From positions 6,014,001 through 6,078,000 of the forward strand of contig CATNEN010000002.1 of assembly GCA_950097015.1 (NCBI GenBank): a DNA stretch of 64,000 bases, in the 5' to 3' direction. This stretch comes from Macrostomum hystrix (taxonomy: Eukaryota > Animalia > Platyhelminthes). Made by a program: the position numbers and the translations under genes. Positions 4,014 to 62,200 of this stretch are shown one piece after another (position 1 is the stretch's first letter; each line of letters opens with the position of its first letter). Below the pieces are notes generated by a model. It saw only the letters and a list, made by a program, of their open reading frames with translations, was not told where the DNA came from and searched no databases.

Positions 4014-4772
4014 TCAATTAAACGGCGACAAGCACTCGCAATAAACTCCATTTGTGTCCGAGGCTTCACTCCTGTCAGTTAAGCCCTTGTCACGAAAGAA
4101 CCTCGCTATGGCGTTCTCCTTGCCTCCGAAGTTGTTTGGCTCACCCGAATTCCAAAGGCTATTGTCCACGGTGATGTTGCAAGCGACCCATGACCAACCA
4201 CCTCGGGGCTCCGCACTGCCTGGCGCCTGAAAGCCTCCGAGCCACAGTGTTTTGCCCTGGCCCTTCGTGACTTGCAGGTTGTCCACGTGGGTCATCTCGG
4301 TAGCGTCAGTCACGTCAGCCATAATCACCAGACCGCTCTCCGACTCGCACTTCTGCCTGCCAGCTTGCCAGCCCCAACTATCAAAGTACAGCTTGTACTT
4401 TACTCCGCACAGGTCATCTTCGTAGCCTGACGGGCACAGGGCGCCAAGTTCGAGTCCCGACTGCTGCTTCACCAACACCTGGCCTCTCCTGGAGCAGCTG
4501 CAGTCCTTTACCGACTTGTTGCACTTGTCAAACACGAACAGCTGGCACGCGCCGTCAGCCATGGCGAACGCTTGACAACGCGGGTTTAGCAGACACAGAT
4601 TGGCGCAGCCAAAAGGAATCACCTCCGGGTGGGTCTGGACGAACTCAGCGTTGATGCAGAGGAAGCCGTCCATCACAGCGAAAAACCCAGCCGAACGGCT
4701 AAGCACCATCGGGCTCTTGAGCACAGAGCAGATCAACAGCATGACGAAAAAGCGGGTGGCACTAGTCTTCAT
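4014..4772 (-). CDS. Secreted PAN/apple + C-type lectin domain protein, intronless, 252 aa
   Basis: ATG 4772 gives signal peptide MKTSATRFFVMLLICSVLKS. PAN motif CANLCLLNPRCQAFAMADGACQL. CTLD motifs WQAGRQKC, LWLGG, WNSGEPNNFGGKEN and YCE. Confidence 0.9.
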   Translation of the reverse strand: MKTSATRFFVMLLICSVLKSPMVLSRSAGFFAVMDGFLCINAEFVQTHPEVIPFGCANLCLLNPRCQAFAMADGACQLFVFDKCNKSVKDCSCSRRGQVLVKQQSGLELGALCPSGYEDDLCGVKYKLYFDSWGWQAGRQKCESESGLVIMADVTDATEMTHVDNLQVTKGQGKTLWLGGFQAPGSAEPRGGWSWVACNITVDNSLWNSGEPNNFGGKENAIARFFRDKGLTDRSEASDTNGVYCECLSPFN

Positions 4773-4997
4773 TTCTGATGTAGCTCGCACATGAGTTGTT
4801 GCTCTATCGTCACACAGTCTTGCTCGCCTCTGCAACAAACCACTCGAGTCGCGAATGCGCCTTTGTAGCTATCGCCCCGAACTCAAGCTTCTATTGTTTC
4901 TAGGATTGTGAGCCCATTTCAGATTTGACAGCTTCACTCATTGGCTGTTGATTTCCAGGGAAAACACTTTACAATGAACTGAATCTCTGTCAGTCCT

Positions 4998-5790
4998 TAG
5001 CTCCCATTGGTTAGCGCTTCGGTATTCGGTCTGAGAGGGCAGGAGTTCGAATCTTAATACAAGGAGACAATTAGCGTGGACTGGAGATGGAGTCTCCCAG
5101 TCCACGGACTGAACAGCTCTTTAACGCAAATGCTGTGGCTGTTCCATTGGTTGTACAATTGACCCAACTGGGTTAGGCGTAATTTATAATTTTATTTGTT
5201 ATGCTAGACTAAGACACTTATAATAGAACAAAGTATACGAGTAGTTAGAGAATTGAAGGTCGGGGTTCTATTTCCGATACCCACTGGAACAATTTGTGTC
5301 CTTTAGCAACACACTTAACTCTACATTGCTTCAATTCATCCAGCTGTTAAATTGGTACCAGAATTAGCTGGGTTTCAGTGGCAGAGCGGTCAACGCGTTT
5401 GCCTCTCGCACAACGGTCCCTAAGTTCGATTCCACGGCGAGGCCACATTTATTTGGGGCGCAGCCGCGGAGAGAAGGCTTGAGGGCTTGTCGTGCAATTT
5501 ACGCCCTTGAGGGCCAACCTCTAAGGCACAGTGAAATGTACACTGCCTGACAATGAGAAAGTCAGGGCAACTGTACACACCTGTGTGAGCGTATGCCTGC
5601 GTACAGTATCTGTGTGTGTGTGCTCACGAGTCAGCGAAATGGGCAGAATTGCCTCCTCGCTGGCTGCGGGTCTAGTGTCACTAATTGATGTCCCCCCAGT
5701 CCATGGACTGAACAGCCGTACGCAGCCTTCTGGTGCGCCGCGCAATAGCTGCGGCTAGTGCTGTCGGCTGCACATCTGACCCATTTGGGG
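4998..5790 (+). mobile_element. Cluster of tRNA-derived SINE pieces (three heads, two families)
   Basis: Pol III A/B boxes at 4998-5053 (TAGCTCCCATTGG...GGAGTTCGAATC). About 5230-5370 matches the 40677 SINE core (TGTGTCCTT..AGCA..ACACTTAACTC..CATTGCTTCA.TTCA.CCAGCTG). A second family starts at ~5370 (TGGCAGAGCGG...AAGTTCGATTCC) and matches 20935-21165 and 46463-46575. Shared tail CCCAGTCCATGGACTGAACAGCC. Confidence 0.75.
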
Positions 5791-6158
5791 CAGGTGAAAT
5801 GAACAACAAAAACTAGTCAGAGACAGGAATGTTATTACTTCTCAAAGTGCGTCGTACTTATACCAGTTAATCATATTCCTAAAGTAACACTTTTAGTACT
5901 ACTCTCAGTACTAGTTCATGACTAAAGTTAAGTGCCCCGTAACCAACGAGCTTTGAGCTTTAAACTCGTTTAATCTGGAGTTTTTTGGCCACGCATTCAA
6001 ATTACCAGAAATTGAAAATAGAGAAAGAAGCGGAGACAAATGGGTATCAAGAGAAGGAACCACAAGCCAGGGGACATTGGGAGAGCATCAATAAACTTCG
6101 CTTCACTTAGAGAATCATAAAAAAAGTATATCTAGAGTTTTATTCCTGATTCCGAGCG

Positions 6159-6765
6159 CAGTGGCGGATCCAGGATTTCTTAAGTGGGGTGGCGGATATG
6201 CGAGTACAGAAACTAGAAACTAAGTAATCCCAATCCATCTATCTTTCATCTATGCTCAATACAAGATCTTGAGAGGATATATCAATTTTTGCATACATTT
6301 TAATGCCTAGAGTGGTGCAAATGACTCTGACACATGAGGGTAGTAGTAGAAGTTGGCTCGGGTCTCGGGAAGAACTAACCCGTTTTGGCCAATATTGACA
6401 ATTGTATTTAGTGAGTTATCAAGGCTTCATTTAAAAGAAAGTCAATGACAATGTGAGAAGACCAACACTATAATATTTTAATTTGAAATTTGAATAGAAT
6501 GTACGTGTTGCAGTGAGACGCGAATAAGCAATCGTTTGGTTTGTCTAGAAATAAATAAAACCGAACCGACAATGTTCCATGGGATGCAATTCCATTCCAA
6601 GGAAAAGCAGACAGACCATAGAAGCAATGGAAATATAATGAAGAACTTGGACTTTGTGGGTTGAGGAGCCCAAAATTAAAATATCTCCCTTCCATGCAAG
6701 TCCAGCCACGGCGAAAGTGGGAGGGCGGCCGCCCCCCCCCGCCCCCCCCCCTGGATCCGCCACTG
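6159..6765. mobile_element. hAT-type MITE, 607 bp
   Basis: Perfect 16-bp TIRs CAGTGGCGGATCCAGG (6159-6174) and CCTGGATCCGCCACTG (6750-6765). Perfect 8-bp TSD TCCGAGCG at 6151-6158 and 6766-6773. No transposase ORF inside. Confidence 0.95.
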
Positions 6766-7348
6766 TCCGAGCGAGCAAAACAAATCGCAACCGATGGCGA
6801 CTGAGGCTGAGAAGCGGTACTTGAGGATGTGCTCAACAAAAGCGTTCTTCTTTTAGTCCAATCTACCTATCAGGTAAACTTTTTACCTGCAACCTCTTCT
6901 TGTCTTGCCTTCTTGGCAACCAGGTTCAAAAGTAGGGAGACATTATCTGTAGCCCTGCTTGCTGCATTGCTTTGATGTTGCTTTTTAAACTTGGCCCCGA
7001 GAAGAAGCTAGGTTTCTTGATAGAAAAGTTCCCAAAAGCCTGACAATGTTGAGTAGGGAGTACGACAGAGTTCAAAGGGCCAGGCCGCGTAAAACATTTC
7101 CCTAAAGTGACGGAACCCAAAAAGAATCGTGTCCAAAGTCAATAAAACAGATGAGGTGAAGAAGGGAAAATACAATGCAGGGGCGTTTAACATTCTGTGT
7201 ACACCGTGACTTCTTGTTGTCATGGCTGCCTGCCTCAAATTCCTTCCAATTCCTTAGATTTAAGATTCAGTTTTAGCTTTGGCCTCGGACAGAGCTCAGT
7301 GTCTCAACTCACGGGACTCTACACTTACTCGGCAAAACACATAATCTG

Positions 7349-8683
7349 ATGAACTGCATCACGGGTAAGTTTCTAATCCCATGCATGCCGTAGCAGTTGG
7401 CACATGAATAGCACCGATTATACAAGCGTTGAAATGCCTAGCTATAAGACTGGCAGTAGGTACCGCCCATTGAAGGTCTAGAAGCTCCGCCAAGGTGAAG
7501 ATCAGTAGACACTGCAGAACTCACTTGGTCGACCCGCTGATAAAATTTGAACCGTACTGTGGTGCTGTGCCGATTAGTGTACAGGGGTGTACTGAGTGCA
7601 TTGAGACTCGCTCACACTGCCATTAAACGAGGCCAAAAAACACAACAGTACAAATCGTGCACCAAAAAAGGTGACCACACTCTTTCAGAAATCATCCTGG
7701 TAATATTCGTCGGTCACTTCGGACAGACTAATTCGCATAGTTTGGACACCTGGCTGAGATTGAAAACTCAGCAATGCATTGCGGACACCCCTGAGCCACT
7801 GCCGGTCGAGTTGCGATCCGAAGTTGAGTGCTTGGCTCTGGCTGAAAGAACTTCTGACCTTCTGGTGGTCCAGTTCAACTCGGACACTCGCCAGTGCTCG
7901 CTGTTCAAGTACATTGCCGTGTGCCACCTCATCGAATCACTAGCCAGCAATGGGATCAATGCACTGCACAGCTGCGCTGCATTCGCCAACACCAGAGCCG
8001 TCAACTTCATGACGCTGAGCAGGAAGCTGGTGAGCAGTGTGGGCTCGAAACTGCGTGCAGCGTGGGTGATGAGTGACGATGAGGAAGCCAGCAAGAGCAA
8101 CTTGGTGTGCGGCGAGACGCAGCAGTGGCAGTCGGAGTCAGTCCAGTTCAGCAGCGAGGGAGCCAGGTTCAACGGAGTGTCTTCCAAGATGCGGCTGGAG
8201 AATGTGGAATTCGCCAACCTGCATTCTGGACTCACGTGGCTGGTCAGGCTGAAACGCTTCGTCGGTCAAAATTTTGCTACGATTCTCGAGGCTGTCACCT
8301 GTGACACGCGGGCGCCCGGGATGGGCTTCTGGGATGGATGGCCTCCTAATGTAGGCTTATACCTGCTTAGGAGGTTCAATATGAGTTCATACGAATTCGT
8401 TACGGTACCGTCAACGAGCACCTTCGACCCGAACACCTTCATCGAAGTTGGTGCGATGTCTGCCGGCCCGACCTTTATCTCCAACTCGTCATTCGTGCCG
8501 CAGTCGCTCGCCAGACTTGAAAAAGTGACAGCAATTTCAACTACACCTGACCTGAACTGCCTCACTCTCGGATTCCGCCAGAATGACTTGCGAATGCTGA
8601 ATGGCACAGTGCGAGCCGTAGCCATTGCTAACGAGACGATGACCGAGGCCGAAATTCGCAGCTTCTTTGCTCAGGTGCGCTGA
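7349..8683 (+). CDS. Secreted PAN-like + LamG/concanavalin-A-like (pentraxin-like) protein; exons 7349-7364 and 7689-8683
   Basis: ATGAACTGCATCACGG|gtaagt joined to ctttcag|AAATCATC is phase-compatible and gives signal MNCITEIILVIFVGHFGQTNS. PAN-like SEVECLALAERTSDLLVVQFNSDTRQCSL. LamG-like motifs ARFNGVSSKMRL, LTWLVRLK, LTLG and MLNGTVRAVAIANETMTEAEIRSFF. Confidence 0.8.
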
Positions 8684-13997: not shown

Positions 13998-16900
13998 ATG
14001 CATCGCTATTTTTTACTACTGCCCATTTTCCTGACCAGCTTAGTGCAGCTCGCTGAAGCAGTTTTTTGTCCCGGACAACCGTTGCGCAGTCACATCTTCC
14101 AGAGAAGCATACCAACGAGTATTCGACTGGCTGACAACGAATGCCTGGGAAGATTTATCATAGGCGGCTGGTGCGCCTGGGAGCCCTTGGAGACGGCGCA
14201 CGGGATCAGCGCCTGCCAGAAGGGATTAAACATTCGTTGGCGCAGGCGATTGTGCAACTGCCCGCCGCCGAAGCCGCTGGAGCTGCGAGAGGCCTGGTGC
14301 CAGCCGGCCAAAAATGCCAGCTCGGTGGCTCGTCTGCTCAATGAGGAGACTCGCCTGAGAGCTCTGAAGCCCGTCATTTGGAACGATCCGAAACTCTGGG
14401 ATTTGACCCAACCATTTAGCAGGCCTGGCTCATTGACTAACTCTCATCTGTCCTGCCTAGATATGCATGTGAGTGTTACTTACAGTTTCCTCACAGTTTG
14501 CTCACAGTTTCCTCACAGTTTCCCCACAGTTTCCTCACAGTTTCCTCCCAGTTTCCTCACAGTTTCCTCACAGTTTCCTCACAGTTTCCTCACAGTTTCC
14601 CCACAGTTTCCTCACAGTTTCCTCCCAGTTTCCTCACAGTTTCCTCACAGTTTCCTCACAGTTTCCTCACAGTTTCCTCACAGTTTCCTCACAGTTTCCT
14701 CACAGTTTCCTCCCAGTTTCCTCACAGTTTCCTCACAGTTTCCTCACAGTTTCCTCACAGTTTCCTCACAGTTTCCTCACAGTTTCCTCACCGTTTCATC
14801 CCAGTTTCCTCACAGTTTCCTCACAGTTTCCTCCCAGTTTCCTCACAGTTTCCTCACAGTTTCCTCACAGTTTCCTCACAGTTTCCTCACAGTTTCATCC
14901 CAGTTTCCTCACAGTTTCCTCACAGTTTCCTCCCAGTTTCCTCACAGTTTCCTCACAGTTTCGTCACAGTTTCCTCACAGTTTCCTCACAGTTTCCTCAC
15001 AGTTTCCTCACAGTTTCCTCACAGTTTCCTCACAGTTTCCTCACAGTTTCATCCCAGTTTCCTCACAGTTTCCTCACAGTTTCCTCCCAGTTTCCTCCCA
15101 GTTTCCTCACAGTTTCCTCCCAGTTTCCTCACAGTTTGCTCACAGTTTGCTCGCAGTTTCCTCACAGTTTGCTCACAGTTTCCTCACAGTTTCCTCACAG
15201 TTTCCTCACAGTTTCCTCACAGTTTCCTCACAGTTTCCTCACAGTTTCCTCAAAGTTTGCTCCCAGTTTGCTCGCAGTTTCCTCACAGTTTCCTCACAGT
15301 TTGCTCACAGTTTCCTCACAGTTTCCTCACAGTTTCCTCACAGTTTGCTCACAGTTTCCTCACAGTTTCCTCACAGTTTCCTCACAGTTTCCTCACAGTT
15401 TCCTCACAGTTTCCTCACAGTTTCCTCACAGTTTCCTCCCAGTTCAGTTTCCTCACAGTTTCGTCACATTTTCTCATTCCTACCAAACTTTCTTTCTCCC
15501 CATGCAGGAGTGCTACTATCACACGGGAGCAACCTACAAGGGCAAAGTGTCCGTGACTAGGCTTGGCCACACTTGCCGACCTTGGGCCGACGTAAAGGAT
15601 TTCCTTGCGGTTTACGGCATGAGCCAGTCAGATATATTAAAGTTTATTAACAGCAAGCCAGAAAACTATTGTAGAAATCCATCAGCCAGTGGGACTCAGT
15701 ATCTGTATACGCGACTCAAGCCTTGGTGCATAACTGCCAACGATAGGAATAGCATGGAGCAATGGGATTATTGTGAAATCCCAAGATGCGGTGCAATGCA
15801 TTATCACGGAACAGTGTTCTTCAATTGGCTCGCAACTCATGACCTGTACAGCAAAGGCCTTTCGTTTACGTCTACTTCTGCTTCAAGCAGTTTTAGAATG
15901 TCGGACTTCACGGGAGACGCGAATGCGGAGGGCTGCTTCAACACATGCCGGTTCCGCTGCGACAGATTCGCTTGTGAGTTCCTTAGCGGGGGGAATTCGG
16001 GTGGTTGCGAAGGCCTATCCAGTCCGCAGACTGAACAGCTGTACACAAGCCTCTGGATGCATCACACGATAGCTGCGGCTGATTTCTAATCTAAGTGTCT
16101 CATCTCAACGTCTAATCCCAGTGTCTAATCTCGATGTCTAATTCCAGTGTCTAATCCCAGTGTCTAATCCCAGTGTCTAATCCCAGTGTCTAATCTCGAT
16201 GTCTAATTCCAGTGTCTAATCCCAGTGTCTAATCCCAGTGTCTAATCCCAGTGTCTAATCCCAGTGTCTAATCCCAGTGTCTGATTCCAGTATCTAATCC
16301 CAGTGTCTAATCCCAGTGTCTAATCCCAGTGTCTAATCCCAGTGTCTAATTCCAGTGTCTAATCCCAGTGTCTAATCCCAGTGTCTAATCCCAGTGTCTA
16401 ATCCCAGTGTCTAATCCCAGTGTCTAATCCCAGTGTCTAATCCCAGTGTCTAATCCCAGTGTCTAATCCCAGTGTCTAATCCCAGTGTCTAATCCCAGTG
16501 TCTAATCCCAGTGTCTAATCCCAGTGTCTAATCCCAGTGTCTAATCCCAGTGTCTAATCCCAGTGTCTAATCCCAGTGTCTAATCCCAGTGTCTAATCCC
16601 AGTGTCTAATCCCAGTGTCTAATCCCAGTGTCTAATCCCAGTGTCTAATCCCAGTGTCTAATCCCAGTGTCTAATCCCAGTGTCTAATCCCAGTGTCTAA
16701 TCCCAGTGTCTAATGCCACTGTCTAATCTCGAAGCCTAATCCCAGTGTCTAATCCCAGTGTCTAATCCCAGTGTCTAATCCCAGTGTCTAATCCCAGTGT
16801 CTAATCCCAGTGTCTAATCCCAGTGTCTAATCCCAGTGTCTAATCCCAGTGTCTAATCCCAGTGTCTAATCCCAGTGTCTAATCCCAGTGTCTAATCCCA

Positions 16901-19900: not shown

Positions 19901-21625
19901 AGAGTCTCACCCCCAGTGTCTCAGCCATAGCCACACCACGTTTCCACCCTCCCTGTGCAGGCAGCAGCATATTCAGTGTGCAGCCCGCACCAGCGCACTC
20001 GGTGGCTGATGCTGCGGTCGCGCGTTAAAATCGATTATTTGGAAATGAAGCACATGATGGGATATACCTGGCTGCAGTCCCCTGAGCTGCCGAATATAAA
20101 GTTTGATTCGATCGAATTGTACGAATTAGGGGAATACAGAATGAACTGTCTGACAATGCACCATCCGCCTATGGGACCCGAGTATGCGGACTACTGGGAG
20201 GACCTTTACAGCTTCGATAGCAATGTGAGTCACTCCGTCACTATGTCACTCCGTCACTATGTCACTCCGTCACTATGTCACTCCGTCACTATGTCACTCC
20301 GTCACTATGTCACTCCGTCACTATGTCACTCCGTCACTATGTCACTCCGTCACTATGTCACTCCGTCACTATGTCACTCCGTCACTATGTCACTCCGTCA
20401 CTATGTCACTCCGTCACTATGTCACTCCGTCACTATGTCACTCCGTCACTATGTCACTCCGTCACTATGTCACTCCGTCACTATGTCACTCCGTCACTAT
20501 GTCACTCCGTCACTATGTCACTCCGTCACTATGTCACTCCGTCACTATGTCACTCCGTCACTATGTCACTCCGTCACTATGTCACTCCGTCTGCACCTCG
20601 TCACTTCGTCGCTTCAGGGCATGCCTGTGGATCCGCCATTGTTCACTAAGACGCACCCACTGTTCACTTTGCCGCTGACAACTCACGACTCGATAAATTC
20701 TGAGGAGCGCTACATGCAGGAGGAATGGGATGTTGAAGCCTGTGGCGACTGGGATATCCTGCAGGACACCTCTGTTGTCGGGGTGCCCGCCAGGCTCGTT
20801 GTTGTCATCGACCAGAAATTGCGCAGGGGTCAGGCCTGCGCAACGCGAAAAGAAGGTGAATATCTAGGCAGATTGTCTCTAAATTTCAGGCTTAACGAAT
20901 TCTGCAACTGCACCCAATTGATAAAGCTTCTGAGCTGAGGAGGTCCTGAGCTCGAATCCACAGTGAGACCATTCTAAATTGGGACCCAGTCGCGGAGAAA
21001 GGCTTTGGCGGGGGGCGGGTGACAACTGCTTGTCGTGCGATTTCCACTCATGATGGACCGTTAGATAGTCAGGGCAGATTTACACACCTGTGTGAGTGTG
21101 TGCTCAGGAGTCAGCGGAATGGGCAGAATTGTCTCCTCGCTGGCTGCGGGTCTAGTGTCACCAAAGGCTGTGCCATTGCCTGAAATCCATCTGGGGATAT
21201 TATCATGACTAATTATGCGTAGATTCAATCACCTTGTCACATTTTCTCAATCAGTGATTGGACCAGGCAATAACACCAGATGCACAAGATCCGTGTACTT
21301 CAGAGTGGACAAAGACAGCGGGGAGGTCATTCACTACCCGGACTTTGGCCGCTCCTACGATCTCACCAAGGAACAGGCCCATTGTCAGTTCGTGTGCGCG
21401 GTGTCGCGAGAGTGCAAGGCTTTCGAATTCTCCCAGGACAACTTCTGCCGTCTGCACCTCATCACCTACACCCTGGAGACTATGTTCACCAGCGAGAAAG
21501 GCACCGTCTATGGCAGAAAGTCCGACATCATGGCAACAGCGAATCCATTCACCTGGAACAACCCTTACCACCCATATTACAGAATGCTGCAGGACATTCT
21601 TACTGAAACTGACTTTTTCCGCTGA
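13998..21625 (+). CDS. Secreted multidomain protein (TSP1-like, kringle, WSC-like, unknown, discoidin/galactose-binding-like, unknown, PAN/apple), 882 aa, 7 exons
   Basis: Exons 13998-14468, 15508-15973, 17245-17638, 18165-18609, 19961-20224, 20618-20855 and 21255-21625. All six introns are GT-AG with matching phases (0,1,2,0,0,1); total 2649 nt = 883 codons. Signal MHRYFLLLPIFLTSLVQLAEA. TSP1-like WCAW..C...RWRRRLCNCPPP. Kringle ECYYHTGATYKG..CRPW..NYCRNP..PWC..WDYCEIPRC. WSC-like CFNTC..RFALL..CQC. C-terminal CQFVCAVSRECKAFEFSQDNFCRL. Confidence 0.8.
14482..15460 (+). repeat. 11-bp minisatellite TTTCCTCACAG filling intron 1, ~85-90 copies
   Basis: Direct tandem array starting 13 bp after the GTGAGT donor at 14469. 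Confidence 0.97.
16107..17135 (+). repeat. 13-bp minisatellite CTAATCCCAGTGT in intron 2, ~78 copies
   Basis: Direct, highly homogeneous tandem array. Confidence 0.97.
17808..17875 (+). mobile_element. Probable end of a hAT (Charlie-like) non-autonomous element
   Basis: CCAAGGGGTCGGCAAACTCTGGCCCGCGGGCCAGATGCGGC resembles the CAGGGGTCGGCAAACT...GGCCCGCGGGCC terminus of hAT MITEs. The other end was not found. Confidence 0.5.
17905..18030 (+). repeat. Short 16-bp array GTCTCATCTCTCCCAT in intron 3
   Basis: About 7 degenerate copies; reverse complement of the 44022-44372 array. Confidence 0.8.
18653..19922 (+). repeat. 14-15-bp C-rich minisatellite CTCACCCCCCAGTGT in intron 4, ~85 copies
   Basis: Direct tandem array with variable C-run length. 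Confidence 0.97.
20229..20592 (+). repeat. 16-bp minisatellite GTCACTCCGTCACTAT in intron 5, ~22 copies
   Basis: Near-perfect array beginning inside the GTGAGT donor. Confidence 0.97.
20935..21165 (+). mobile_element. SINE fragment (second family) in intron 6
   Basis: Shares GTCAGCGGAATGGGCAGAATTGTCTCCTCGCTGGCTGCGGGTCTAGTGTCAC and CTTGTCGTGC with 5370-5690. Confidence 0.75.
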
Positions 21626-21629
21626 GAAC

Positions 21630-48833: not shown

Positions 48834-49271
48834 AAGTTTATATTTTGGTACCATGAAAAAAACAGCACAAATCCAAGTTGTTTTTCCAGACATTGGCTAC
48901 TCAGCGATTCATAGAAATTTAACCCTTAGGCACAACTCCAGGGCTCCGATGGGTTTGAGGCTAACGTGATACACACTACCCATCCCCACCCAAAAAGGAA
49001 CGGTAGTAATTCTACTTTTAGTAGGCTGCTGTCCAGCAGCTTCAGTGAAATTCGAAGCATTCGTTCGTGATACTATTGGAGTAAGTCAAAAGTATAAATA
49101 ACCTACAAACAATAGCACTTATGCATTATAAAAATAAGTTTAGATGCTATATATGCGATCGTATGTAAATTCGCGGCTTCGAAAATTTTCTATGGGCTAA
49201 GAGCAAGAAAGCGAGCTCCGACAAGATACACAAGTTTTAGTTATAAAGGGTTATAAATACCAGTTGAAACC

Positions 49272-52517: not shown

Positions 52518-53331
52518 TTAGGAATATTGGAATCCAAAAACCTCTAATTCGCAAATAGTCACAGGAATGTTGGACTGTCGATTGAGAATCTTAATCTTGC
52601 TTCCGTAGCCGTAGCAGGTCAGGTTGACGACGCTGAATGTGGCGAAGGTGTTGTTGTATTGGTTGCACTGAGCTCCGTCCAGAAGCAGGACGAAGTCTCC
52701 AAGTCTCCAAGGGCAGCAGTCGTTTCTGTTGTAGATGGTGACGTAGGAGATGACCGCAGCGGCAGACAGATGGCCCTCCCACCATTCGTTGTTTAGGGTA
52801 GTGTCGTCAGTGTGGCTGCAGGAACCACTGTAGAAATTTAGGTCTCTGTTTCCGTCCATCGCCTTTTCGCAAGGGCTTCCATGAGCGATGGAACTCTGGG
52901 CACAGCTGGCAAACGGAAGCTTCTGATTCGCTGTGGGAGAGTGACGTGACATGAGTGCGTCAAAAGTTCGATTTGAAAACTCACATCAATTTCTACCTTG
53001 AGATCTAAATTAACAATTCAATTCATTCACCTTTAGGTGGTCGGATGAAGATGGTGCACATCGCAGTCCTGCTTGTCCAGTTGCTTGAGTAGAAGGCCTG
53101 AGCACTGATCAGGTGGCAGTGGCTCAGCAGCGAGAAGAATCCGTAGCAGGTCGAGTTGAAGCCGCACAGATAAGCACAGAGCCGCTCAGAGCTGGCGCCC
53201 ATCGATTCCTGAGTGACCGACGGAGCTTGGAAGCTGGCGTTCCGGCCGATGATGAAGCCATTGTTGATTGAGGCGACACCTCTGAGGACACTCAGAACTG
53301 TTACAACTTGCGAGAAGAGTAGCGGCAACAT
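52518..53331 (-). CDS. Secreted PAN/apple + F-type (fucolectin) lectin, copy A, 237 aa
   Basis: Exons 53331-53031 and 52930-52518 (phase 1, 100-bp intron). Signal MLPLLFSQVVTVLSVLRGVAS. PAN CAYLCGFNSTCYGF..CHL. FTLD Ca motif AMDGN and fucose motif H-x28-RNDCCPWR. Confidence 0.9.
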
Positions 53332-54800: not shown

Positions 54801-54984
54801 AATATCCCAAACAGTATCACAATGTTGCCATAATATGTGCGCCTAACTCGTTTTCAGCATTATTTTATTGGTTCCTGTTATGATCTTTGCATTTAGGTAC
54901 AAACCAATTAATATGATTCATTTCTATTAACTCTAACCATCTGGTTTAATTCTTTTACAATGTCACTTTTGTTATATTCTTCTG

Positions 54985-56044
54985 TTATTCGTCTATTTAA
55001 CTAAATCGCATAAGTAACCATAGATAACCTTTATTCGTCTATTTAACTAAATCGCATAAGCAACCATAAATAACCTTTATTCGTCTATTTAACTAAATCG
55101 CATAAGCAACCATAAATAACCATTATTCGTCTATTTAACTAAATCGCATAAGCAACCATAAATAACCATTATTCGTCTATTTAACTAAATCGCATAAGCA
55201 ACCATAAATAACCTTTATTCGTCTATTTAACTAAATCGCATAAGCAACCATAAATAACCATTATTCGTCTATTTAACTAAATCGCATAAGCAACCATAAA
55301 TAACCTTTATTCGTCTATTTAACTAAATCGCATAAGCAACCATAAATAACCATTATTCGTCTATTTAACTAAATCGCATAAGCAACCATAAATAACCATT
55401 ATTCGTCTATTTAACTAAATCGCATAAGCAACCATAAATAACCTTTATTCGTCTATTTAACTAAATCGCATAAGCAACCATAAATAACCTTTATTCGTCT
55501 ATTTAACTAACTCGCATAAGTAACCATAAATAACCTTTATTCGTCTATTTAACTAAATCGCATAAGTAACCATAGATAACCTTTATTCGTCTATTTAACT
55601 AAATCGCATAAGCAACCATAAATAACCTTTATTCGTCTATTTAACTAAATCGCATAAGCAACCATAAATAACCTTTATTCGTCTATTTAACTAACTCGCA
55701 TAAGTAACCATAAATAACCTTTATTCGTCTATTTAACTAAATCGCATAAGTAACCATAGATAACCTTTATTCGTCTATTTAACTAAATCGCATAAGCAAC
55801 CATAAATAACCTTTATTCGTCTATTTAACTAAATCGCATAAGCAACCATAAATAACCTTTATTCGTCTATTTAACTAAATCGCATAAGCAACCATAAATA
55901 ACCTTTATTCGTCTATTTAACTAAATCGCATAAGCAACCATAAATAACCTTTATTCGTCTATTTAACTAACTCGCATAAGCAACCATAAATAACCATTAT
56001 TCGTCTATTTAACTAAATCGCATAAGCAACCATAAATAACCTTT
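54985..56044. repeat. 46-bp AT-rich minisatellite TTATTCGTCTATTTAACTAAATCGCATAAGCAACCATAAATAACCT, ~23 copies
   Basis: Period confirmed at 55031/55077. Confidence 0.97.
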
Positions 56045-56305
56045 ACACACAGCCGAAATTTAACAAGGTCGAAATTGTCAAAGTTGTCAAAGCTGTTTTG
56101 TTTTGCGGGCAAGCCTAAAGGCGCACACAGTTAAAAAGCCGACAAACAATAGCACTCCTGCATTGTAAAAATGCAGTTTTAGAAGCTATATTTGCGACCG
56201 TAGGTAGATTCGAGGCTTCGAAACTTTTCTATGGGCTAAGAGCAAGAAAGCGAGCTCCGACAAGATACTCACTTTTTTGTGAAAAGGGTTAATGACCGGT
56301 TCGCG

Positions 56306-56600
56306 ACACCCCACGTCTCGTCCCTCTGCCCCCTTTGTGCATGCGCTGCTTCCTCCCCCGCCACTCTGCGCCACCCCCACTTCTCGTCCCTCTGCCCCCT
56401 TTGTGCATGCGCTGCTTCCTCCCCCGCCACTCTGCGCCACCCCCACTTCTCGTCCCTCTGCCCCCTTTGTGCATACGCTGCTTCCTCCCCCGCCACTCTG
56501 CGCCAACCCCACTTCTCGTCCCTCTGCCCCCTTTGTGCATACGCTGCTTCCTCCCCCGCCACTCTGCGCCACCCCCGCGTCTCGTCCCTCTGTCCCCTTT
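56306..56600. repeat. 66-bp GC-rich minisatellite, ~4.5 copies (family of the 49272 array)
   Basis: Period 56381/56447. Its left flank 56140-56290 is homologous to 49100-49250. Confidence 0.93.
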
Positions 56601-56609
56601 CGCGTGTTG

Positions 56610-57170
56610 GGCAGTCACCGTCTGCTGTATGTGGGGCATGTTCCACAAATCTAGCTTACTGCCAGCCACGGGAAAAGGTCCGGCACGTGTGCGCTGCGCC
56701 GACATTGTTCGACATCCGCGAGGCCTGATCTTGCGCCTGGAGCTAGCGAAAACTCTCCAGGTTAAAGAGCGTGTGCGCCAGGTGCTTCTACAGAGGCTAG
56801 CGAGGCGGCCGCCATGTGTCCAGTGTTGGCAATCGAGAAGCACGCTAGATTCAACACCCTGAAATCAGCCGAGGCAATCCCATTTGCCTACGGCGATGCT
56901 GGTGGCAATCAGCGGCTGCTGACCGGCAGGCTGCTCGATCGATTTCTATCTGACAAGTTAGACGTGGCGGCTTCTCAGCCGCAAGCGTGAGCACTACTCA
57001 GCACACAGCCTTCGCCGAGGCGGTGCGACCTGGGCCTCAGTGTTAGGCGTGCCCGTGCCCGACATCATGCGGATCGGTGACTGGAAGAGCGATGCGGTGC
57101 AGCGGTACTTCCCGCAGTTTCAGCAGGGCATGGCGGCATCCCTCGTGTTTGCAGATGGTGTAGGGACTCT
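56610..57170 (+). mobile_element. DIRS/Ngaro-type tyrosine recombinase, 5'-truncated and frameshifted
   Basis: Motifs FHKSSLLP, CADI..LILRLELAKTLQVKER, CPVLAIEKH, HYSAHSLRRGGATWA (H at 57004) and GDWKSDAVQRY (Y at 57106), spread over three frames. Confidence 0.85.
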
Positions 57171-57430
57171 AGTTTTAGTTCCACATTCTGTCTCGTTGTG
57201 ACTCTTTGTCGCTTACCCTCCCTTTTTGTTGTATTTGTCGCTTCCTCTTCGCTGCTTTGGCTTTGGAGGTTTCGCTGCTGCTTTCGCAAAGTTTGTGCCT
57301 CGCTCACGCTTCTTTGTTCGTGCTTTCGGGGCACTAATATTTCTTAGTCAATAGAAATGAACGACTTAACGGCTTAAACAACTCAAGCCAAATGAGGAGC
57401 GACTCATCGTTCGCATCCAAAAACAATGGT

Positions 57431-57720
57431 CTAAGGAAAGCTGAAGCCATAGACCTCAAACTCGCAGCCTGCTTCCGTGGCCAGCGAAGGTCAGGTTGAT
57501 CACGCTGAATTTGCCGGTGTTGTATTTGTTGCACTGAAGTCCATTCAGCTGCAGGATGAAGTTTCCCAGTCTCTCCGGGCGGCTGTCTTGCCTGTTGTAG
57601 ATGGTGACGTAGGAGATGACTGCGTCCGCGGACAGTTGGCCCTCCCACCACGTGTTGGCCTGGCTGTCCGTGAGGCTCAATGCTGATCGTTTTGATGCAT
57701 TTTGTGTTACCGTATGTGGA
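57431..57720 (-). pseudogene. F-type lectin copy B, doubly deleted derivative of a copy-D-like gene
   Basis: Retains WWEGQLSADAVISYVTIYNRQDSRPERLGNF. Lacks 38 bp relative to D (frameshift). Its 5' part is joined to D-intron-like sequence. Confidence 0.85.
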
Positions 57721-57829
57721 CTAATCATTTTTGAGTCCTTCTAAATACAACACTTCCACTGACAGTGAACCATTACAACAGGATGGAACGGGACTTTAGT
57801 TAAAAATAATAGAAAGTTTGCTTAGAAAC

Positions 57830-58560
57830 AAATGATTACCGACTTTTAGTTTAGCTGCAGGATAAAGACACTAGATAAGTAGTAAATTAAAGTACGTGTA
57901 GTGGTTAGAGAATAACTGCCTACATTATCATCACTTCGTCAGCAATACGAAGTAGTCAGTGAAAACTGTAAAGTTTACTGTAAAAGGAGAAAGTGTTCCG
58001 AAATTTGACACAAAAGACTTCAGTTTGATTTTATTATAACTTTCACGACGGCTTCCGTCTCTCCGCCACTCTGCGCCACCCCCGCGTCTCGTCCCTCTGC
58101 CCCCTTTGTGCGCGTGCTGCGTCCTCCCCGCCCCACTGCGCCACCCCCGCGTCTCGTCCCTCTGCCCCCTTTGTGTGCGCGCTGCGTCCTCCCCGCCCCA
58201 CTGCGTAACCCCCGCGTCTCGTCCCTCTGCCCCCTTTGTGTGCGCGCTGCGTCCTCCCCGCCCCACTGCGTAACCCCCGCGTCTCGTCCCTCTGCCCCCT
58301 TTGTGCGCGTGCTGCGTCCTCCGCGCCCCACTGCGCCACAACCGCGCTAACCTGCGAGAAGAGCAGCGGCAACATCTCTGTTGAATATATCTGAGCAAAA
58401 AAGTTGTCCCGCTTTTAAGGAAGGAAAGGAAATAATTTGAGTCCAATGGAATGAAGCTGAGCTGATATATTGAGATGGGCAGTAGGAAGCAGACAGGCCT
58501 ATTCATTCTATGCAGAACTAGTGGGCTGTGTTGGAGGCTGTGACAAAAACGTTTTTTCCT
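57830..58560 (-). pseudogene. Gutted PAN-F-lectin paralog (copy E): upstream region, start codon and 3' flank retained, coding body replaced by a minisatellite
   Basis: 58350-58560 is homologous to the 5' ends of copies A (53310-53510) and C. ATG 58375 gives MLPLLFSQV. 57830-58060 is homologous to the 3' flank of C (58930-59135). Confidence 0.85.
58062..58345. repeat. 65-bp GC-rich minisatellite, ~4.3 copies (family of the 49272 array)
   Basis: Period confirmed at 58091/58156/58221/58286. Confidence 0.93.
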
Positions 58561-59143
58561 TTCAAGTCTCACAGCAGAGGACAAAAGCCTTTTTTAATGG
58601 TGCAGGAAAATACAGAGGTAACAGGAAAGCTAGCAAACTACTCGTACATAGAAAACTTTCTTTCGCATAACTTTTTCCTACCGATTATGCATTACCAAGA
58701 TGATTCATTTCGATCCATCCAAAGTTCATTTTTAACCTTTCAATTGCTACCATTGCCGTATTTGCAAAAAATCTAAAAATTTTTAAGCGTGCGCAAAAAA
58801 AATTTGTTAGAGGGGATTTCCCCTTTAGGTAGTTCGACTGTTGAAGCCGGCTTTATGTTTTCCTTTCGAAAAAATGTTACTGTATTTTTCTTTATTTAAA
58901 AAATTTCATAAAGTTCGCTCGAAAAAATTAGATTACCGATTTTTTGTTTTGCTGCAGGATAAAAACACAAAATGTATAGTAAATTAAAGTACGTGTACAT
59001 TGGTTAGAGAAAAACTGTGCAGAAATCATCACTTCGTTAACAATAGTTAGTGGAACTGTAAATTTGACTGTAAAAGAAGAAACTGCTCCAAAATTTGACA
59101 CAAAAACTTCACTTTCACGACGACTTCCCTGTCGAAGCCGCAA

Positions 59144-59944
59144 TCAAGGAAATGAATATCCGTAAGCCTCCACCTCACACAATACAAATGAACTAGTTGT
59201 CAGTCGGCTGAAGACTTTAATCCTGCTCCCAAAGCCAGTGCAGGTGAAGTTTCCGACAAGAAATGTAGAAACGGTGTTGTTGTACTCATTGCATCGTAAT
59301 TCGTCCAGCAGCAGAACAAAGTCACCAAGTTTCCAAGGGCAGCAGTCGTTTCTGTTGTAGAGGGTGACGTAGGAGATGACCGCAGCGGCAGAGAGCTGGC
59401 CCTCCCACCATTCGTTGTTTAGGGTGTTGTACGTGTGGCTGCAGGAGCCATGATTGAAAATTTGGTCTTTGTTTCCGTCCATCGCTTTTTGGCAAGGGCC
59501 TTCATTAGAGATGGAACTCTGGGCACAGCTGGCAAACGGAAGCTTCTGATTCGCTGTGGGAGAGTGACGTGACATGAGTGCGTATTTGATTAAAAAACTC
59601 ACATTAATTTCTACGTTGGGATCTAAACTAGTAATTCATTCACCATTAGGTGGTCGGATGTAGATGGTGCACATCGCAGTCCTGCTGGTCCAGTTGCTTG
59701 AGTAGAAGGCCTGAGCACTGATCATATGGCAGTGGCTTAGCAGCCAGAAGAATCCGTAGCAGGTCGAGTTGAAGCCGCACAGATAAGCACAGAGCCGCTC
59801 AGAGCTGGCGCCCATCGATTCCTGAGTCACCGACGGAGCTTGGAAGCTGGCGTTCCGGCCGATGATGAAGCCATTGTTGGTTGATGCGGCACCTCTGAGG
59901 ACACTCAGAACCGTTACAACTTGCGAGAAGAGTAGCGGCAACAT
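59144..59944 (-). CDS. Secreted PAN/apple + F-type lectin, copy C, 236 aa
   Basis: Exons 59944-59644 and 59553-59144 (phase 1). Exon 1 is nearly identical to copy A. FTLD AMDGN and H-x27-RNDCCPWK. Confidence 0.9.
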
Positions 59945-60884
59945 TGTAGCATATCTCTGAGCAAAAAAGTTTTCCCGCTTAGGAGGGCAATAATTTGAGT
60001 CCAAGCTGAGCAGATATATTGAGATGGGTAGTAGGAAGCAGACAATGGCAGGCCTAAAAAACTCATTCTATGTTGACCTAGTTGGCAGTTTTGGCAAAAA
60101 TGTCAAAACGTTATTTTCCTTACAACTGGGCGCATTTTGCGGTTTTAATTGGAAGTGAAGGATAACTATGAAATAATTTAGGCTCTTTCTCTCCTCATTG
60201 AGGTGCATCTATTATGACAATGAGCTTAATTGAAAAATTCCCGCTAGGTGGGTAGCTGCATGAGATAATTTCGTAACGACAAGAGATCTATTAGAGCTTG
60301 TCACTTGGACCGAAGCTTTATATTAAACGTCAACTATGCTATCATCGCCTCGGTCTAAAGGCGATTCGGCTTGCACTGCTGCTCACAATTGTTTCAGACC
60401 GACAAAAGTGCAAAAATGTTTGCACTGGTATGCTGAATAAATGCTGGCTGTGTTTCGCACATTTTCCTTATTTACCAGAGAAATTGATCTGCAGAAACTT
60501 CACTTGAAGCCTGCATCGGTTGAACCCTGTCAAACGCTAATTGTTATGCACTGTGTGTTGATCAGGTTAACAGTCTGATTTAGAATAGCTATTTGAAAAA
60601 GAGTAATAGTCGCAGGAGGGCTGCGGGCAATGGCACATTATTTGGTGACACTAGAACCGCAGCCAGCGAGGAGGCTATTCTGCCCATTTCGCTGACACTT
60701 GAGCACACAGTCCCATAAGTGTGTACATCTGCCCTGAATTTCTCATCATCATGCAGTGTACAGTCTCACCGTGCCTTGGAGATTGGCCCTCCAGTATATG
60801 AATTGCAAGACAAGCCCCCAAGCCTTGTCTCCGCGGCTACGCGCCAAATGAATGTGACTCATCGTTCGCAACCGAAACAATGGT

Positions 60885-62200
60885 CTAAGGAAAGCTGAAG
60901 CCATAGACCTCGAACACGCAGATCTGAAGCGAGTCAACGAGTCGACGAAAAACCCGCAGCCTGCTTCCGTAGCCGTGGCAAGTCAGGTTGATCACGCTGA
61001 ATTCGCCGGTGTTGTGTTGGTTGCACTGAGCTCCGTCCAGCTGCATGCTGAAGTTTCCCAGTCTCTCCTGGCAGCAGTCTTGCCTGCTGTAGATGGTGAC
61101 GTAGGAGATGACTGCGGCCGCGGACAGTTTGCCCTCCCACCACGGGTTGGCCTGTCTGTCCGTGTGGCTGCAGGAGCCTTTACTGAATTCTTGGTTTCGG
61201 TTTCCGTCGATTGCTCTCGCGCAAACATGATCAGAAAACGTCGAGCTCTGCTTGCAGCTGGCGATAGAGAGTCTGTGAGGAACTGCAAAAATAAATTAGC
61301 GATGGGTCAAGAGCCGTTTGACGCATACTTCAAATTAAACAATTTTGAGTAGACTTTGAGTATGTTAGCCATCAATAAACCTCTTGAAAGTTTAGTTAAC
61401 TTTTTAATTTTTTAAAGAGACGTGCTGAAAGACGTCTCTTGGAACTGTTAGCGTCTGCTTGTCATTTGCCTGAAATCACGAATCACAGCATTAACAGTAG
61501 AAAGACGGGAGGGTAGAATATCATATCCACATGTTTCTTTTTTTCTGTATCTCCTAAAATATTTAACCAACCGCCATATTGCAATCAAGAAAACGGGTTG
61601 GTTTTTATCGCTCTATTCGATGAAAAAATCTGAATCACAGTATCGGCGTCGTCGAGATTTTCAACGATCCACATTGTGGACTTTGACGAAAATCGGTCAG
61701 TCGGTTCGGGAGCTATTAGGAAGTAGGCAGCGGGCAACGGGTATTTAAAGTACCCCGTGTTCTTGCAACTGCCGATTGAAAGTCTCTGAGGGACTGTTGG
61801 ATGTCGATCAATGCTGATTGTTTGGATGCATTTTGTGTTACCGTATGTTGAACAGGACGTACAAGAAATAATAATTGACGAAGTTGAAATCATACGTGTA
61901 GTATTTCACACCTGCAAGGCTTCGAATGTACACAGTGCACTGAGTTTCTGTGCTGGTCCAGTTGCTCCAGAAGTTCGCATGAACGCTGAACAGGTGGCAC
62001 TGGTTGAGCAGCCGGAAGAAGACGAAGCAAGTGACACTTGCGCGTGGTCAGCGCAGACGTCGAGCACGGCTCACCGAGCCAGGCCTGGCACTCTCGCTCC
62101 TCTGGAGCATGGAGCGTTGGCCCCCGTCTATCTCGGCGACGTCGTGCCGCAATTGACCAGCGCTGAACCAGAAGAAGATTAAGCACCTCAGCTGTTAGCT
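60885..62200 (-). pseudogene. PAN + F-type lectin copy D: intact FTLD exon (61282-60885), disrupted PAN exon (ends 61912)
   Basis: The FTLD exon reads open with AIDGN and canonical H-x26-RQDCCQER through to CVFEVYGFSFP*. Exon 1 ends TCFVFFRLLNQCHL..CTVYIRSLA|gt in phase 1, but upstream it has a TGA and at least two frameshifts. Confidence 0.75.
61585..61793 (-). other. Divergent FTLD-like exon inside the intron of copy D
   Basis: Phase-1 acceptor ccaacag|TC CCT CAG gives VPQRLSIGSCK, versus VPHRLSIASCK at the start of the D FTLD exon. Open for 69 codons to a stop at 61585. Confidence 0.55.

What the first reader, a model, noticed from the sequence alone, without database searches (positions are those of the whole stretch)
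4014..62200. One PAN/apple module fused to three different lectin folds: a possible modular pattern-recognition family
Sequence: within 64 kb there are signal-PAN-C-type lectin (4.0-4.8 kb), signal-PAN-like-LamG/ConA (7.3-8.7 kb) and signal-PAN-F-type lectin genes (at least four copies with PAN or signal remnants, 52-62 kb), plus a PAN-terminated kringle protein. Knowledge: gastropod FREP/CREP/GREP proteins join a shared IgSF module to different lectin domains. Inference: this may be a parallel system using PAN as the common N-terminal scaffold with swappable carbohydrate-recognition domains (immunity, mucus or adhesion). In the FTL genes the PAN and lectin domains sit on separate phase-1 exons, which suits exon shuffling.
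Basis: partly seen in the sequence, partly recalled or inferred. Interest (0 to 1): 0.8.

Follow-up and report, generated by a model that had tools for sequence, protein, structure and literature searches.

The report
Flatworm lectin families sharing PAN-type heads
This flatworm (Macrostomum) DNA stretch holds members of three very large families of small secreted sugar-binding-type proteins, each with a PAN/apple-type front module but a different lectin fold behind it; the pattern is real, but the front modules are only distant cousins, not one swappable part.

Summary
The window encodes:
- an intronless signal-PAN-C-type-lectin gene (4017-4772, minus strand);
- a signal/PAN-like/ConA-LamG3 gene (7349-8683, plus strand);
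- four PAN-F-type-lectin copies at 52-62 kb, two intact and two damaged;
- a kringle exon and a separate weak PAN exon.

Each gene belongs to a large family in this 220-Mb Macrostomum genome. There are at least 150 PAN-CTLD copies, about 120 LamG-type matches and 47 PAN-FTL loci. At least 7 PAN-fibrinogen loci add a fourth fold.

PAN is well supported for the CTLD and FTL families. For the LamG family it is only probable: sequence tests fail, while language-model features and the model's topology agree with PAN.

By profile comparison, the PANs of different families are no closer to each other than to the kringle-side PAN. Gene structures also differ between families. PAN+CTLD is already known in nematodes, and PAN+lectin in plants.

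"Swapping" is seen only within families. A middle segment is kept nearly identical at the DNA level, or in the FTL genes the whole PAN exon is, and it is joined to old, divergent and re-paired ends. The scan had already noted this mosaic pattern on other windows of this genome.

Function (secreted multivalent glycan binders) is inferred, not shown.

The parts
4017..4772 (-). Intronless gene for signal peptide + 6-Cys PAN/apple + C-type lectin-like domain (EPN motif), 252 aa; stop codon at 4014-4016. Roughly: signal 4698-4772, PAN and conserved linker 4437-4697, CTLD 4017-4436.
   Evidence: ORF. Family profile against PDB: L-selectin 7.6e-6, EtMIC5 PAN 3e-4. Pfam PAN_4/PAN_3/PAN_1 below cut-off in 11, 8 and 5 of 20 members. 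At least 150 paralogs.
7349..7364 (+). Inferred exon 1 of the LamG-type gene: ATG plus 13 nt, first part of the signal peptide, phase-1 donor GTAAG at 7365.
   Evidence: Read from the sequence. Inferred; no RNA evidence.
7689..8683 (+). Exon 2 of the LamG-type gene: rest of the signal peptide, a 4-5-Cys PAN-like module (about 7742-7990), a long helix, and a ConA-like/Laminin_G_3 jelly roll (about 8021-8680).
   Evidence: AF2 pLDDT 86.7. VIA Z 18.9 to AbnA domain 4, 14.4 to CBM40. Foldseek 1e-7. ESM Atlas Laminin_G_3 clusters. Pfam Laminin_G_3 in 16 of 32 members. N-terminal module: protein-atlas features 0.93, all 30 hits PAN_1; PAN_3 E=0.049.
15511..15789 (+). Kringle domain exon.
   Evidence: Pfam Kringle 2e-13, 50.9 bits against a cut-off of 34.3.
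21368..21511 (+). PAN-type module in open frame 21215-21625 (the 'PAN-terminated' end of the proposed kringle protein; linkage to the kringle exon not tested).
   Evidence: Pfam PAN_1 E=0.0089, below cut-off. hhalign to the PAN(FTL) profile: probability 83%.
53031..53331 (-). PAN-FTL gene A, exon 1: signal peptide + PAN module.
   Evidence: ORF; donor read; 94% identical to gene B exon 1.
52518..52930 (-). PAN-FTL gene A, exon 2: F-type lectin domain (includes the stop codon).
   Evidence: Pfam F5_F8_type_C_2 2.4e-9; acceptor read.
57453..58375 (-). Degenerate PAN-FTL copy: FTL fragment 57453-57668 with an in-frame TGA; a start-plus-signal remnant near 58375 runs into a 65-bp minisatellite.
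59644..59944 (-). PAN-FTL gene B, exon 1: signal peptide + PAN module.
   Evidence: Pfam PAN_1 in 11 of 21 family members, best 1.9e-4. Protein-atlas score 0.95 to PAN clusters.
59144..59553 (-). PAN-FTL gene B, exon 2: F-type lectin domain (includes the stop codon).
   Evidence: Pfam F5_F8_type_C_2 1.5e-8; acceptor CACAG read.
60888..62041 (-). Divergent PAN-FTL copy: open FTL exon 60888-61277; only the second half of the PAN exon (61922-62041) remains in frame, and a TGA interrupts the frame just upstream.
   Evidence: The same truncated layout is found in the duplicate block at C2:4.930 Mb.

Best explanation
The window lies in a lectin-gene-rich part of contig 2 of a Macrostomum genome. It holds members of three separate, large, lineage-restricted families of small secreted two-domain proteins.

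Each family pairs an N-terminal PAN/apple-type module with a different C-terminal glycan-binding fold: CTLD, F-type lectin or ConA/LamG3. A fibrinogen-type family elsewhere in the genome does the same.

The families are old and separate. They have different gene structures, and their PAN modules are only distantly related.

Inferred mechanism: the C-terminal domain binds glycans. The PAN module gives oligomerisation or anchoring, and so avidity. This is the job done by collagen or coiled-coil stalks in collectins, ficolins and molluscan fibrinogen-related proteins.

Shown here: within each family, diversity arises by duplication plus region-limited homogenisation. A conserved middle block, or in the FTL genes the whole PAN exon, stays nearly identical at the DNA level. 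The ends are anciently divergent and are re-paired between copies.
For: Family sizes:
- At least 150 full-length PAN-CTLD copies.
- 121 LamG-type matches.
- 140 FTL exons. Of 59 PAN-profile hits, 47 have an FTL exon within 2 kb downstream on the same strand.
- At least 157 fibrinogen exons. Seven lie 0.3-1.7 kb downstream of a Pfam-level PAN_1 hit.

Domain identity.

PAN(FTL) and PAN(CTLD) are homologous: hhalign 91.7%, E=7.7e-7, cysteines in register. The FTL-PAN profile also picks up PAN-CTLD genes at E about 1e-3.

Mosaic evolution:
- PAN-CTLD core, codons 66-125: 95% nucleotide identity and pS 0.02-0.15. Flanks: 48% and 67% identity, pS 0.5-0.8.
- LamG family core, codons 57-160: 89% identity against 56% and 52% in the flanks.
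- Re-paired ends: copy L013 shares its N part with L004 (2% different) but its C part with L019 (4% different), and L019's N part differs from L013's by 53%.
- FTL genes: the PAN exon is 96-100% identical between copies, while the lectin exons fall into two types about 80% identical.

Lineage restriction: every named full-length relative is from Macrostomum lignano. The other full-length relatives looked up lie on short unnamed contigs; for the three traced, the sources were one metagenome assembly and two sequencing-run assemblies.
Against: - No expression, secretion or binding data; signal peptides were judged by eye.
- PAN in the window's own copies is below Pfam cut-offs.
- The structure model of the PAN-CTLD protein failed (pLDDT 41).
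- The LamG-family N-module is not PAN by any sequence statistic.
- The CTLD lacks the usual Cys after the E-N pair, and its WND motif is altered, so sugar binding may be atypical or lost.
- The role given to PAN is inferred from other proteins only.
- Family counts are six-frame matches, not annotated genes.
Confidence: 0.62

Rival explanations
1. One reading: one modular recognition system in which a single PAN scaffold has been combined by exon shuffling with interchangeable lectin domains. This would be a functional parallel of gastropod FREP/CREP/GREP, acting in immunity.
For: - PAN-type heads occur on three or four lectin folds in one genome.
- A phase-1 intron lies between PAN and FTLD.
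- The constant PAN exon is joined to two lectin-exon types.
- The FTL-PAN profile weakly cross-detects CTLD-family PANs.
Against: - PANs of different families are as far from each other as from an unrelated PAN. The LamG module is not detectably related to either.
- Cysteine patterns differ: 6, 4-5 and 4-5.
- PAN-CTLD is intronless, and the LamG gene has no inter-domain intron.
- There are no immune data.
Confidence: 0.15
2. Only two (three with fibrinogen) of the folds are truly PAN-headed. The N-terminal module of the LamG family is an unrelated small disulphide-rich domain, so the 'three folds in this window' pattern is partly a motif-level illusion.
For: - hhalign probability 16% and 0.8% to the two PAN profiles.
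- No PAN among PDB profile hits.
- Pfam: one PAN_3 hit at E=0.049 among 25 members.
- The module lacks the C3-C4 hairpin disulphide.
Against: - Language-model features: all 30 nearest named clusters are PAN_1, score 0.93, 176 of 256 features shared. The Pfam-supported FTL PAN used as a control gives similar values, 0.95 and 172.
- The AF2 secondary-structure order is strand, helix carrying the second Cys, then a hairpin carrying the third Cys. This is PAN-like.
- The weak hhalign alignment puts the cysteines in register.
Confidence: 0.25
3. The pairing has no special meaning. PAN is simply one of the commonest extracellular modules in this genome, and lectin domains are also hugely expanded, so PAN-lectin fusions and their co-location are by-products of two promiscuous, expanded domain classes in a duplication-prone region.
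For: - At least 140 Pfam-level PAN_1 exon hits, many not next to any lectin exon found here. Examples are clusters at C38:5.72-5.82 Mb, C33:0.48-0.49 Mb and C15.
- 93 of 140 FTL exons lack a PAN.
- The C2 4-9.4 Mb region is dense in FTL, fibrinogen and LamG genes.
- PAN+CTLD also arose in nematodes (PMC5297725).
Against: - In each family PAN sits in the same place, directly after the signal peptide and before a single lectin domain, in proteins of 235-335 aa.
- Each architecture has been kept through tens to hundreds of duplications with open frames. That argues for a retained function.
Confidence: 0.3

Closest known systems
Nematode CTLD + PAN/CW proteins (C. elegans clec class IV, '1-2 CTLD + 1-2 CW'; PMC5297725)
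   Same: [quoted passage not shown]
   Different: - The nematode module is the CW/PAN_3 type.
- 16 genes in C. elegans against at least 150 here.
- No close sequence relationship: the named full-length relatives found by the library-wide search are all from Macrostomum.
- Here PAN is always N-terminal and the genes are intronless.
Gastropod FREP/CREP/GREP (IgSF + fibrinogen, C-type lectin or galectin)
   Same: One type of N-terminal non-lectin module in front of different lectin folds; multigene families; recombination or conversion contributes to diversity.
   Different: - The N-module is PAN, not IgSF.
- The PANs of the different families are not close relatives.
- No evidence of haemocyte expression, parasite binding or somatic diversification.
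- The resemblance is an analogy only.
Plant G-type lectin receptor kinases (bulb-type lectin + S-locus glycoprotein + PAN + kinase)
   Same: PAN/apple together with a lectin domain in an extracellular recognition protein; very large families.
   Different: In plants PAN follows the lectin domain in a transmembrane kinase. The flatworm proteins are small, soluble, PAN-first and use animal lectin folds.
F-type lectins (eel agglutinin AAA type; review PMC5712786)
   Same: The FTL exons carry the H...R-x-D-x4-R/K fucose-site motif and hit the galactose-binding-like clan in Pfam. Multi-FTLD arrays also exist in this genome.
   Different: The review's domain-partner figure legend lists H-type lectin, CTLD, pentraxin, regulatory, transmembrane and CCP domains. 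Its text adds S/T/P, factor I-membrane attack complex and FA58C. PAN, apple and flatworms are not mentioned. The 47 PAN-FTL loci found here therefore look like an undescribed architecture.
Ficolins, collectins and coiled-coil fibrinogen-related proteins
   Same: A small secreted lectin with an N-terminal non-lectin module that could supply oligomerisation and avidity.
   Different: The module is a globular disulphide-bonded PAN domain, not a collagen or coiled-coil stalk. Oligomerisation has not been tested.

Membership tests
PAN/apple (Pfam clan PAN), CTLD-family head | Significant match to a PAN model or a known PAN structure | tested here: met
   Family profile against PDB: Eimeria MIC5 PAN E=3e-4, TgMIC4 0.17. 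Pfam PAN_4/PAN_3/PAN_1 hits in 11, 8 and 5 of 20 members are all below cut-off.
PAN/apple, CTLD-family head | Six-Cys pattern (C1...C2-x3-C3-x5-C4...C5...C6) and the PAN fold | tested here: inconclusive
   The Cys pattern is present and invariant in 20 sequences. The fold was not obtained: AF2 pLDDT 41.
PAN/apple, FTL-family head | Match to the Pfam PAN models | tested here: inconclusive
   PAN_1 in 11 of 21 members, best E=1.9e-4. The window copy scores 13.5 bits against a cut-off of 21.4. hhalign to PAN(CTLD): 91.7%. Protein-atlas features 0.95 to PAN clusters. EtMIC5 E=0.12.
PAN/apple, LamG-family head | Sequence or structure match to PAN | tested here: inconclusive
   Sequence tests not met (PAN_3 E=0.049 in 1 of 25 members). 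Language-model features are all PAN_1, score 0.93. The model has a helix-plus-hairpin order. The fold search was filled by the ConA-like domain.
C-type lectin-like domain | Profile match over the whole domain, WxGG/WIGL-type core, Cys framework, EPN-type site | tested here: met
   L-selectin 7.6e-6 over residues 134-247; mosGCTL-1, codakine and langerin also hit. UniProt names the M. lignano relatives 'C-type lectin domain-containing'. Pfam Lectin_C hits only 1 of 20 members, at 0.012. The Cys after E-N is missing and WND is altered, read from the sequence.
F-type lectin domain | Jelly-roll domain of the galactose-binding-like clan with the H-x(~26)-R-x-D-x4-R/K motif | tested here: met
   F5_F8_type_C_2 at 38.1 and 35.6 bits, above the 27.8 cut-off. 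Motif present with x27/x28 spacing (read). Structure not modelled.
ConA-like / Laminin_G_3 | ConA-like beta-sandwich fold and a Pfam PF13385 match | tested here: met
   VIA Z 18.9, rmsd 2.7 over 180 residues; many LamG, pentraxin and CBM40 matches. ESM Atlas Laminin_G_3 clusters. PF13385 in 16 of 32 members, best 9e-7; the window copy only 0.16.
FREP/CREP/GREP-type system | The same N-terminal module, closely related, shared across the lectin classes | tested here: not met
   Cross-family PAN similarity is no higher than to an unrelated PAN. The LamG head is not detectably related.
FREP/CREP/GREP-type system | Immune-cell expression, pathogen binding, somatic diversification | not testable with these tools
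   No expression or binding data were available.

The most novel reading that the evidence does not exclude
Macrostomum flatworms may run a very large germline recognition repertoire, at least 350 genes, of 'PAN-headed' lectins built on four different glycan-binding folds. In it the PAN module would be a common assembly or anchoring handle. Region-limited gene conversion would keep a constant joint while old N- and C-terminal cassettes are re-paired. This would be a PAN-based counterpart of molluscan FREP/CREP/GREP, evolved independently.
Probability: 0.2. Interest if true: 0.75.

Novelty: new variant of a known kind. Interest (0 to 1): 0.45.

Why it matters
Lineage-specific lectin expansions are the usual raw material of invertebrate recognition systems, and flatworm immunity and mucus biology are poorly known.

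This genome places the same kind of N-terminal module in front of CTLD, F-type, ConA-like and fibrinogen-type domains, in hundreds of genes. That gives a concrete and testable hypothesis about what PAN does for a lectin: assembly, anchoring or a second binding site.

I did not find PAN-FTL in the F-type lectin review I read (PMC5712786), so it may be an undescribed architecture.

The result also lowers the original claim. There is no evidence for one shuffled PAN scaffold, and PAN+lectin combinations exist in nematodes and plants.

Tried and rejected
- Pfam on the window's own ORFs gave no PAN, CTLD or LamG hit at E<=0.1. I therefore moved to family profiles.
- AlphaFold on the PAN-CTLD alignment of 20 close paralogs failed (pLDDT 41). 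This used one of the two jobs, so no N-module could be folded alone.
- The whole-model fold searches were filled by the ConA-like domain and say nothing about residues 16-100.
- The LamG N-module profile found no PAN in PDB or Pfam.
PAN-fibrinogen therefore rests on coordinate adjacency, checked by eye for seven pairs.
- The word search with the FTL exon found nothing. Searches with M. lignano locus tags found no papers.
- I considered the co-location of the three genes as a functional cluster and rejected it. The PAN-CTLD gene is the only member of its family listed on contig 2. The surrounding 4-9.4 Mb is generally rich in lectin genes.
- Spliced models of the FTL and LamG genes were not joined.

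Full report
**Context.** The window is eukaryotic and full of minisatellites (42 array rows). Earlier notes of this scan identify the genome as a Macrostomum flatworm. This fits my own searches, in which every named relative is from Macrostomum lignano, at 55% identity or less. The window is G000:C2:6014001-6078000 in a 220-Mb assembly.

**Checking the observation.**

*PAN-CTLD gene.* The minus-strand ORF at 4014-4838 holds a 252-aa protein from the Met at 4772. It has a hydrophobic N-terminus, six cysteines in PAN spacing, a conserved Cys-rich linker and a CTLD-like end with EPN. Alone it gives no Pfam hit. A profile of it plus 18 paralogs and one M. lignano protein (A1) hits L-selectin at 7.6e-6 over residues 134-247. 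It also hits the Eimeria tenella MIC5 PAN domain at 3e-4 over residues 48-84.

*LamG-type gene.* The plus-strand ORF at 7547-8683 is best read as exon 2. An ATG at 7349 followed by a GTAAG donor at 7365, and a TTTCAG acceptor ending at 7688, give a phase-1 junction and a plausible signal peptide. This splice is inferred. A 36-sequence alignment gave a good AlphaFold model (pLDDT 86.7, pTM 0.84). Residues about 111-330 are a ConA-like jelly roll:
- VIA Z 18.9 to a carbohydrate-binding domain of arabinanase AbnA; Z 14.4 to sialic-acid-binding CBM40 modules; Z 11-13.6 to pentraxins and laminin-G domains.
- Foldseek 1e-7 to trans-sialidases; the aligned target region was not reported.
- ESM Atlas Laminin_G_3 clusters.
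- Pfam Laminin_G_3 in 16 of 32 family members.

*PAN-FTL genes, 52-62 kb.* There are two intact two-exon genes. Each has one phase-1 intron between a signal+PAN exon and an FTL exon. A third copy has an open FTL exon but a frame-broken PAN exon. The fourth is a remnant whose start runs into a minisatellite. The FTL exons pass Pfam F5_F8_type_C_2 and carry the H...R-x-D-x4-R/K motif. Because spliced models may not be joined, the exons were analysed separately by reference.

*Kringle and PAN.* The kringle exon is solid (2e-13). The PAN at 21.4 kb is weak in Pfam (0.0089) but aligns to the FTL-family PAN profile at 83% probability. Whether both belong to one gene was not tested.

**These are members of very large families.**
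- The PAN-CTLD protein has at least 150 matches in its own genome, nearly all full-length and most without stops. They lie mostly on contigs 3, 7, 9, 1 and 25. The window's copy is the only one listed on contig 2.
- The LamG-type protein has 121 matches. About 25 close ones lie on contig 2 at 7.1-9.0 Mb. Many at 27-35% identity lie elsewhere, and some of these are intronless with their own signal peptide.
- The FTL exon has 140 matches.
- A profile of the FTL-family PAN exon (A4) has 59 matches. Of these, 47 have an FTL exon within 2 kb downstream on the same strand. PAN-FTL is therefore a family of about 47 loci. The other 93 FTL exons, many in tight tandem arrays, have no PAN.
- Pfam Fibrinogen_C has at least 157 exon matches.
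- Pfam PAN_1 has at least 140 matches, nearly all above its cut-off. Seven PAN_1 hits lie 0.3-1.7 kb upstream of a fibrinogen exon on the same strand: C1:21129022, C1:21132072, C33:2974934, C37:2063128, C15:548531, C39:6666103 and C32:2762907. This partly confirms the earlier scan note s1-394548 of PAN-like fibrinogen lectins and adds a fourth fold. I could not fetch those loci.

**Is the head really PAN, and is it one module?**
- *FTL family.* PAN_1 is found in 11 of 21 members, best 1.9e-4. EtMIC5 is again the top PDB hit, at 0.12. The language-model search puts the exon among PAN clusters at 0.95.
- *PAN(FTL) against PAN(CTLD).* hhalign gives 91.7% probability, E=7.7e-7, 19% identity, with C2-C5 in register. 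The FTL-PAN profile also weakly detects PAN-CTLD genes in the genome. These two heads are homologous PAN domains.
- *Control.* PAN(FTL) is just as similar to the PAN at 21.4 kb, which is not attached to a lectin: 83%, E=8.7e-6. It is also about as similar to generic Pfam PAN_1. Nothing groups the lectin-attached PANs together.
- *LamG-family head.* It has four invariant cysteines and a nearly invariant fifth. It is not significantly similar to either PAN profile (16% and 0.8%) or to any PDB PAN. One member has a PAN_3 hit at 0.049. On the other side, all 30 nearest named ESM Atlas clusters are PAN_1 (0.93; 176 of 256 shared features), comparable with the positive control. The model's order of elements is PAN-like: strand, helix carrying the second Cys, hairpin carrying the third Cys. 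I rate PAN for this head at about 70-75%.
- *Gene structures differ.* PAN-CTLD is intronless. The LamG gene has an intron inside the signal peptide. FTL genes have an intron between the domains. Together these points argue for separate, old families and against one scaffold shuffled among lectin domains.

**What 'swapping' does occur.**
- *PAN-CTLD family.* Codons 66-125 cover the second half of PAN, the linker and the first CTLD strands. They are 95% identical at the DNA level, 92% at third positions, with pS 0.02-0.15. The signal and first half of PAN (48% identity) and the rest of the CTLD (67%) have pS 0.5-0.8.
- *LamG family.* The same design: core codons 57-160 at 89% identity against 56% and 52% in the flanks.
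- *Re-paired ends.* L013 has the N part of L004 (2% different) and the C part of L019 (4% different), and L019's N part differs from L013's by 53%. L011 and L020 share C parts (12% different) but not N parts (77% different).
- *Close PAN-FTL copies.* The signal+PAN exon is 96-100% identical, while the lectin exons fall into two types about 80% identical.

This is region-limited homogenisation, most simply gene conversion, plus recombination. The scan has already described it for PAN-CTLD and LamG clusters on other windows of this genome (s1-410593, s1-306119, s1-398636, s1-395431, s1-258398). My measurements agree with those notes and extend the pattern to the window's own copies and to the FTL genes.

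**Distribution and literature.**
- A full HMM search of 1.84 billion cluster representatives with the PAN-CTLD profile found about 20 clusters that cover both domains at 230-275 aa. The named ones are all M. lignano. The others I looked up lie on contigs of about 1-2 kb; the three traced came from one metagenome assembly and two sequencing-run assemblies.
- The LamG family has four outside hits. One is from M. lignano and the rest are unnamed contigs.
- PAN+CTLD is stated to be known in nematodes, with 16 C. elegans genes of the CTLD+CW class (PMC5297725).
- PAN with lectin domains is standard in plant G-type lectin receptor kinases (papers listed).
- The F-type lectin review does not list PAN among FTLD partners and does not mention flatworms (PMC5712786).
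- I found no paper describing these Macrostomum families.

**Mechanism.**
- *Shown:* the architectures, the family sizes, the open frames and the mosaic evolution.
- *Inferred from what is known of these domain families:* the proteins are secreted; the C-terminal domains bind glycans (fucose-type for the FTL motif, mannose-type for EPN CTLDs, unknown for the ConA-like domain); PAN supplies oligomerisation, matrix or mucus anchoring, or a second binding site. PAN/apple domains dimerise factor XI and bind carbohydrate in apicomplexan MIC4. These last examples are from my own knowledge, not tested here.
- *Open:* whether the role is immune, mucosal, adhesive or reproductive.

**Verdict.** The finding is a new variant of known kinds of lectin architecture and lectin-family evolution. 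Its most original element is the PAN-FTL family and the recurrence of PAN-type heads on four folds. It is not a demonstrated modular immune system.

Noticed in passing
window 52000-64000 and G000:C2:4926000-4951000: The window's FTL cluster has an inverted duplicate about 1.1 Mb away on the same contig. The duplicate includes the copy with the truncated PAN exon (same 35-74 profile match and same 69-aa open frame), so the damage predates the segmental duplication. One further near-identical gene lies on C39:14.596 Mb.
   Followed up: partly
window 4772-7349: The PAN-CTLD gene (minus strand) and the LamG-type gene (plus strand) are head to head, 2.6 kb apart. A shared promoter region is possible but was not examined.
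   Followed up: no
G000, e.g. C38:5724363-5824704, C33:482142-491736, C15:1904029-2073086, C1:26.0-27.5 Mb: There are at least 140 PAN_1 exon hits genome-wide, nearly all above the Pfam cut-off. Many lie in clusters that are not next to any lectin exon found here, and some sit in 210-310-aa open frames. Their partner domains are unknown.
   Followed up: no
G000:C1:6621045-6637124 and C3:4452970-4462650: Tight tandem runs of FTL exons about 0.5 kb apart, with no PAN exon, suggest multi-FTLD proteins or dense arrays distinct from the PAN-FTL family.
   Followed up: no
window 49269-49821, 56309-56600, 58059-58346: Related 65-68-bp GC-rich minisatellites flank or invade the FTL cluster. One of them replaces the body of a PAN-FTL copy after its start codon.
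   Followed up: no
window 11936-12631 (-), 25604-26215 (+), 43088-45480 (+): Other apparent coding stretches were not examined: a 231-aa ORF (possibly ankyrin-like), an ORF ending in a C2H2 zinc-finger-type motif, and charged, glutamine/arginine-rich ORFs.
   Followed up: no
P0007 (3072 aa), P0008 (811 aa), P0018, P0023: In the big protein search some database proteins carry the PAN-CTLD unit four times, or only the PAN-plus-core part at the C-terminus of a longer protein. These may be merged gene models or real fusions.
   Followed up: no
PMC12732829 (M. lignano Mlig-tuf1/tuf2): These are orphan genes from a study of intestine-enriched M. lignano genes. One of them has weak IgV-like and CLECT domain hits, and knockdown gives a fasting phenotype. 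A relation to the families here is unknown, but it would be a lead for function.
   Followed up: no
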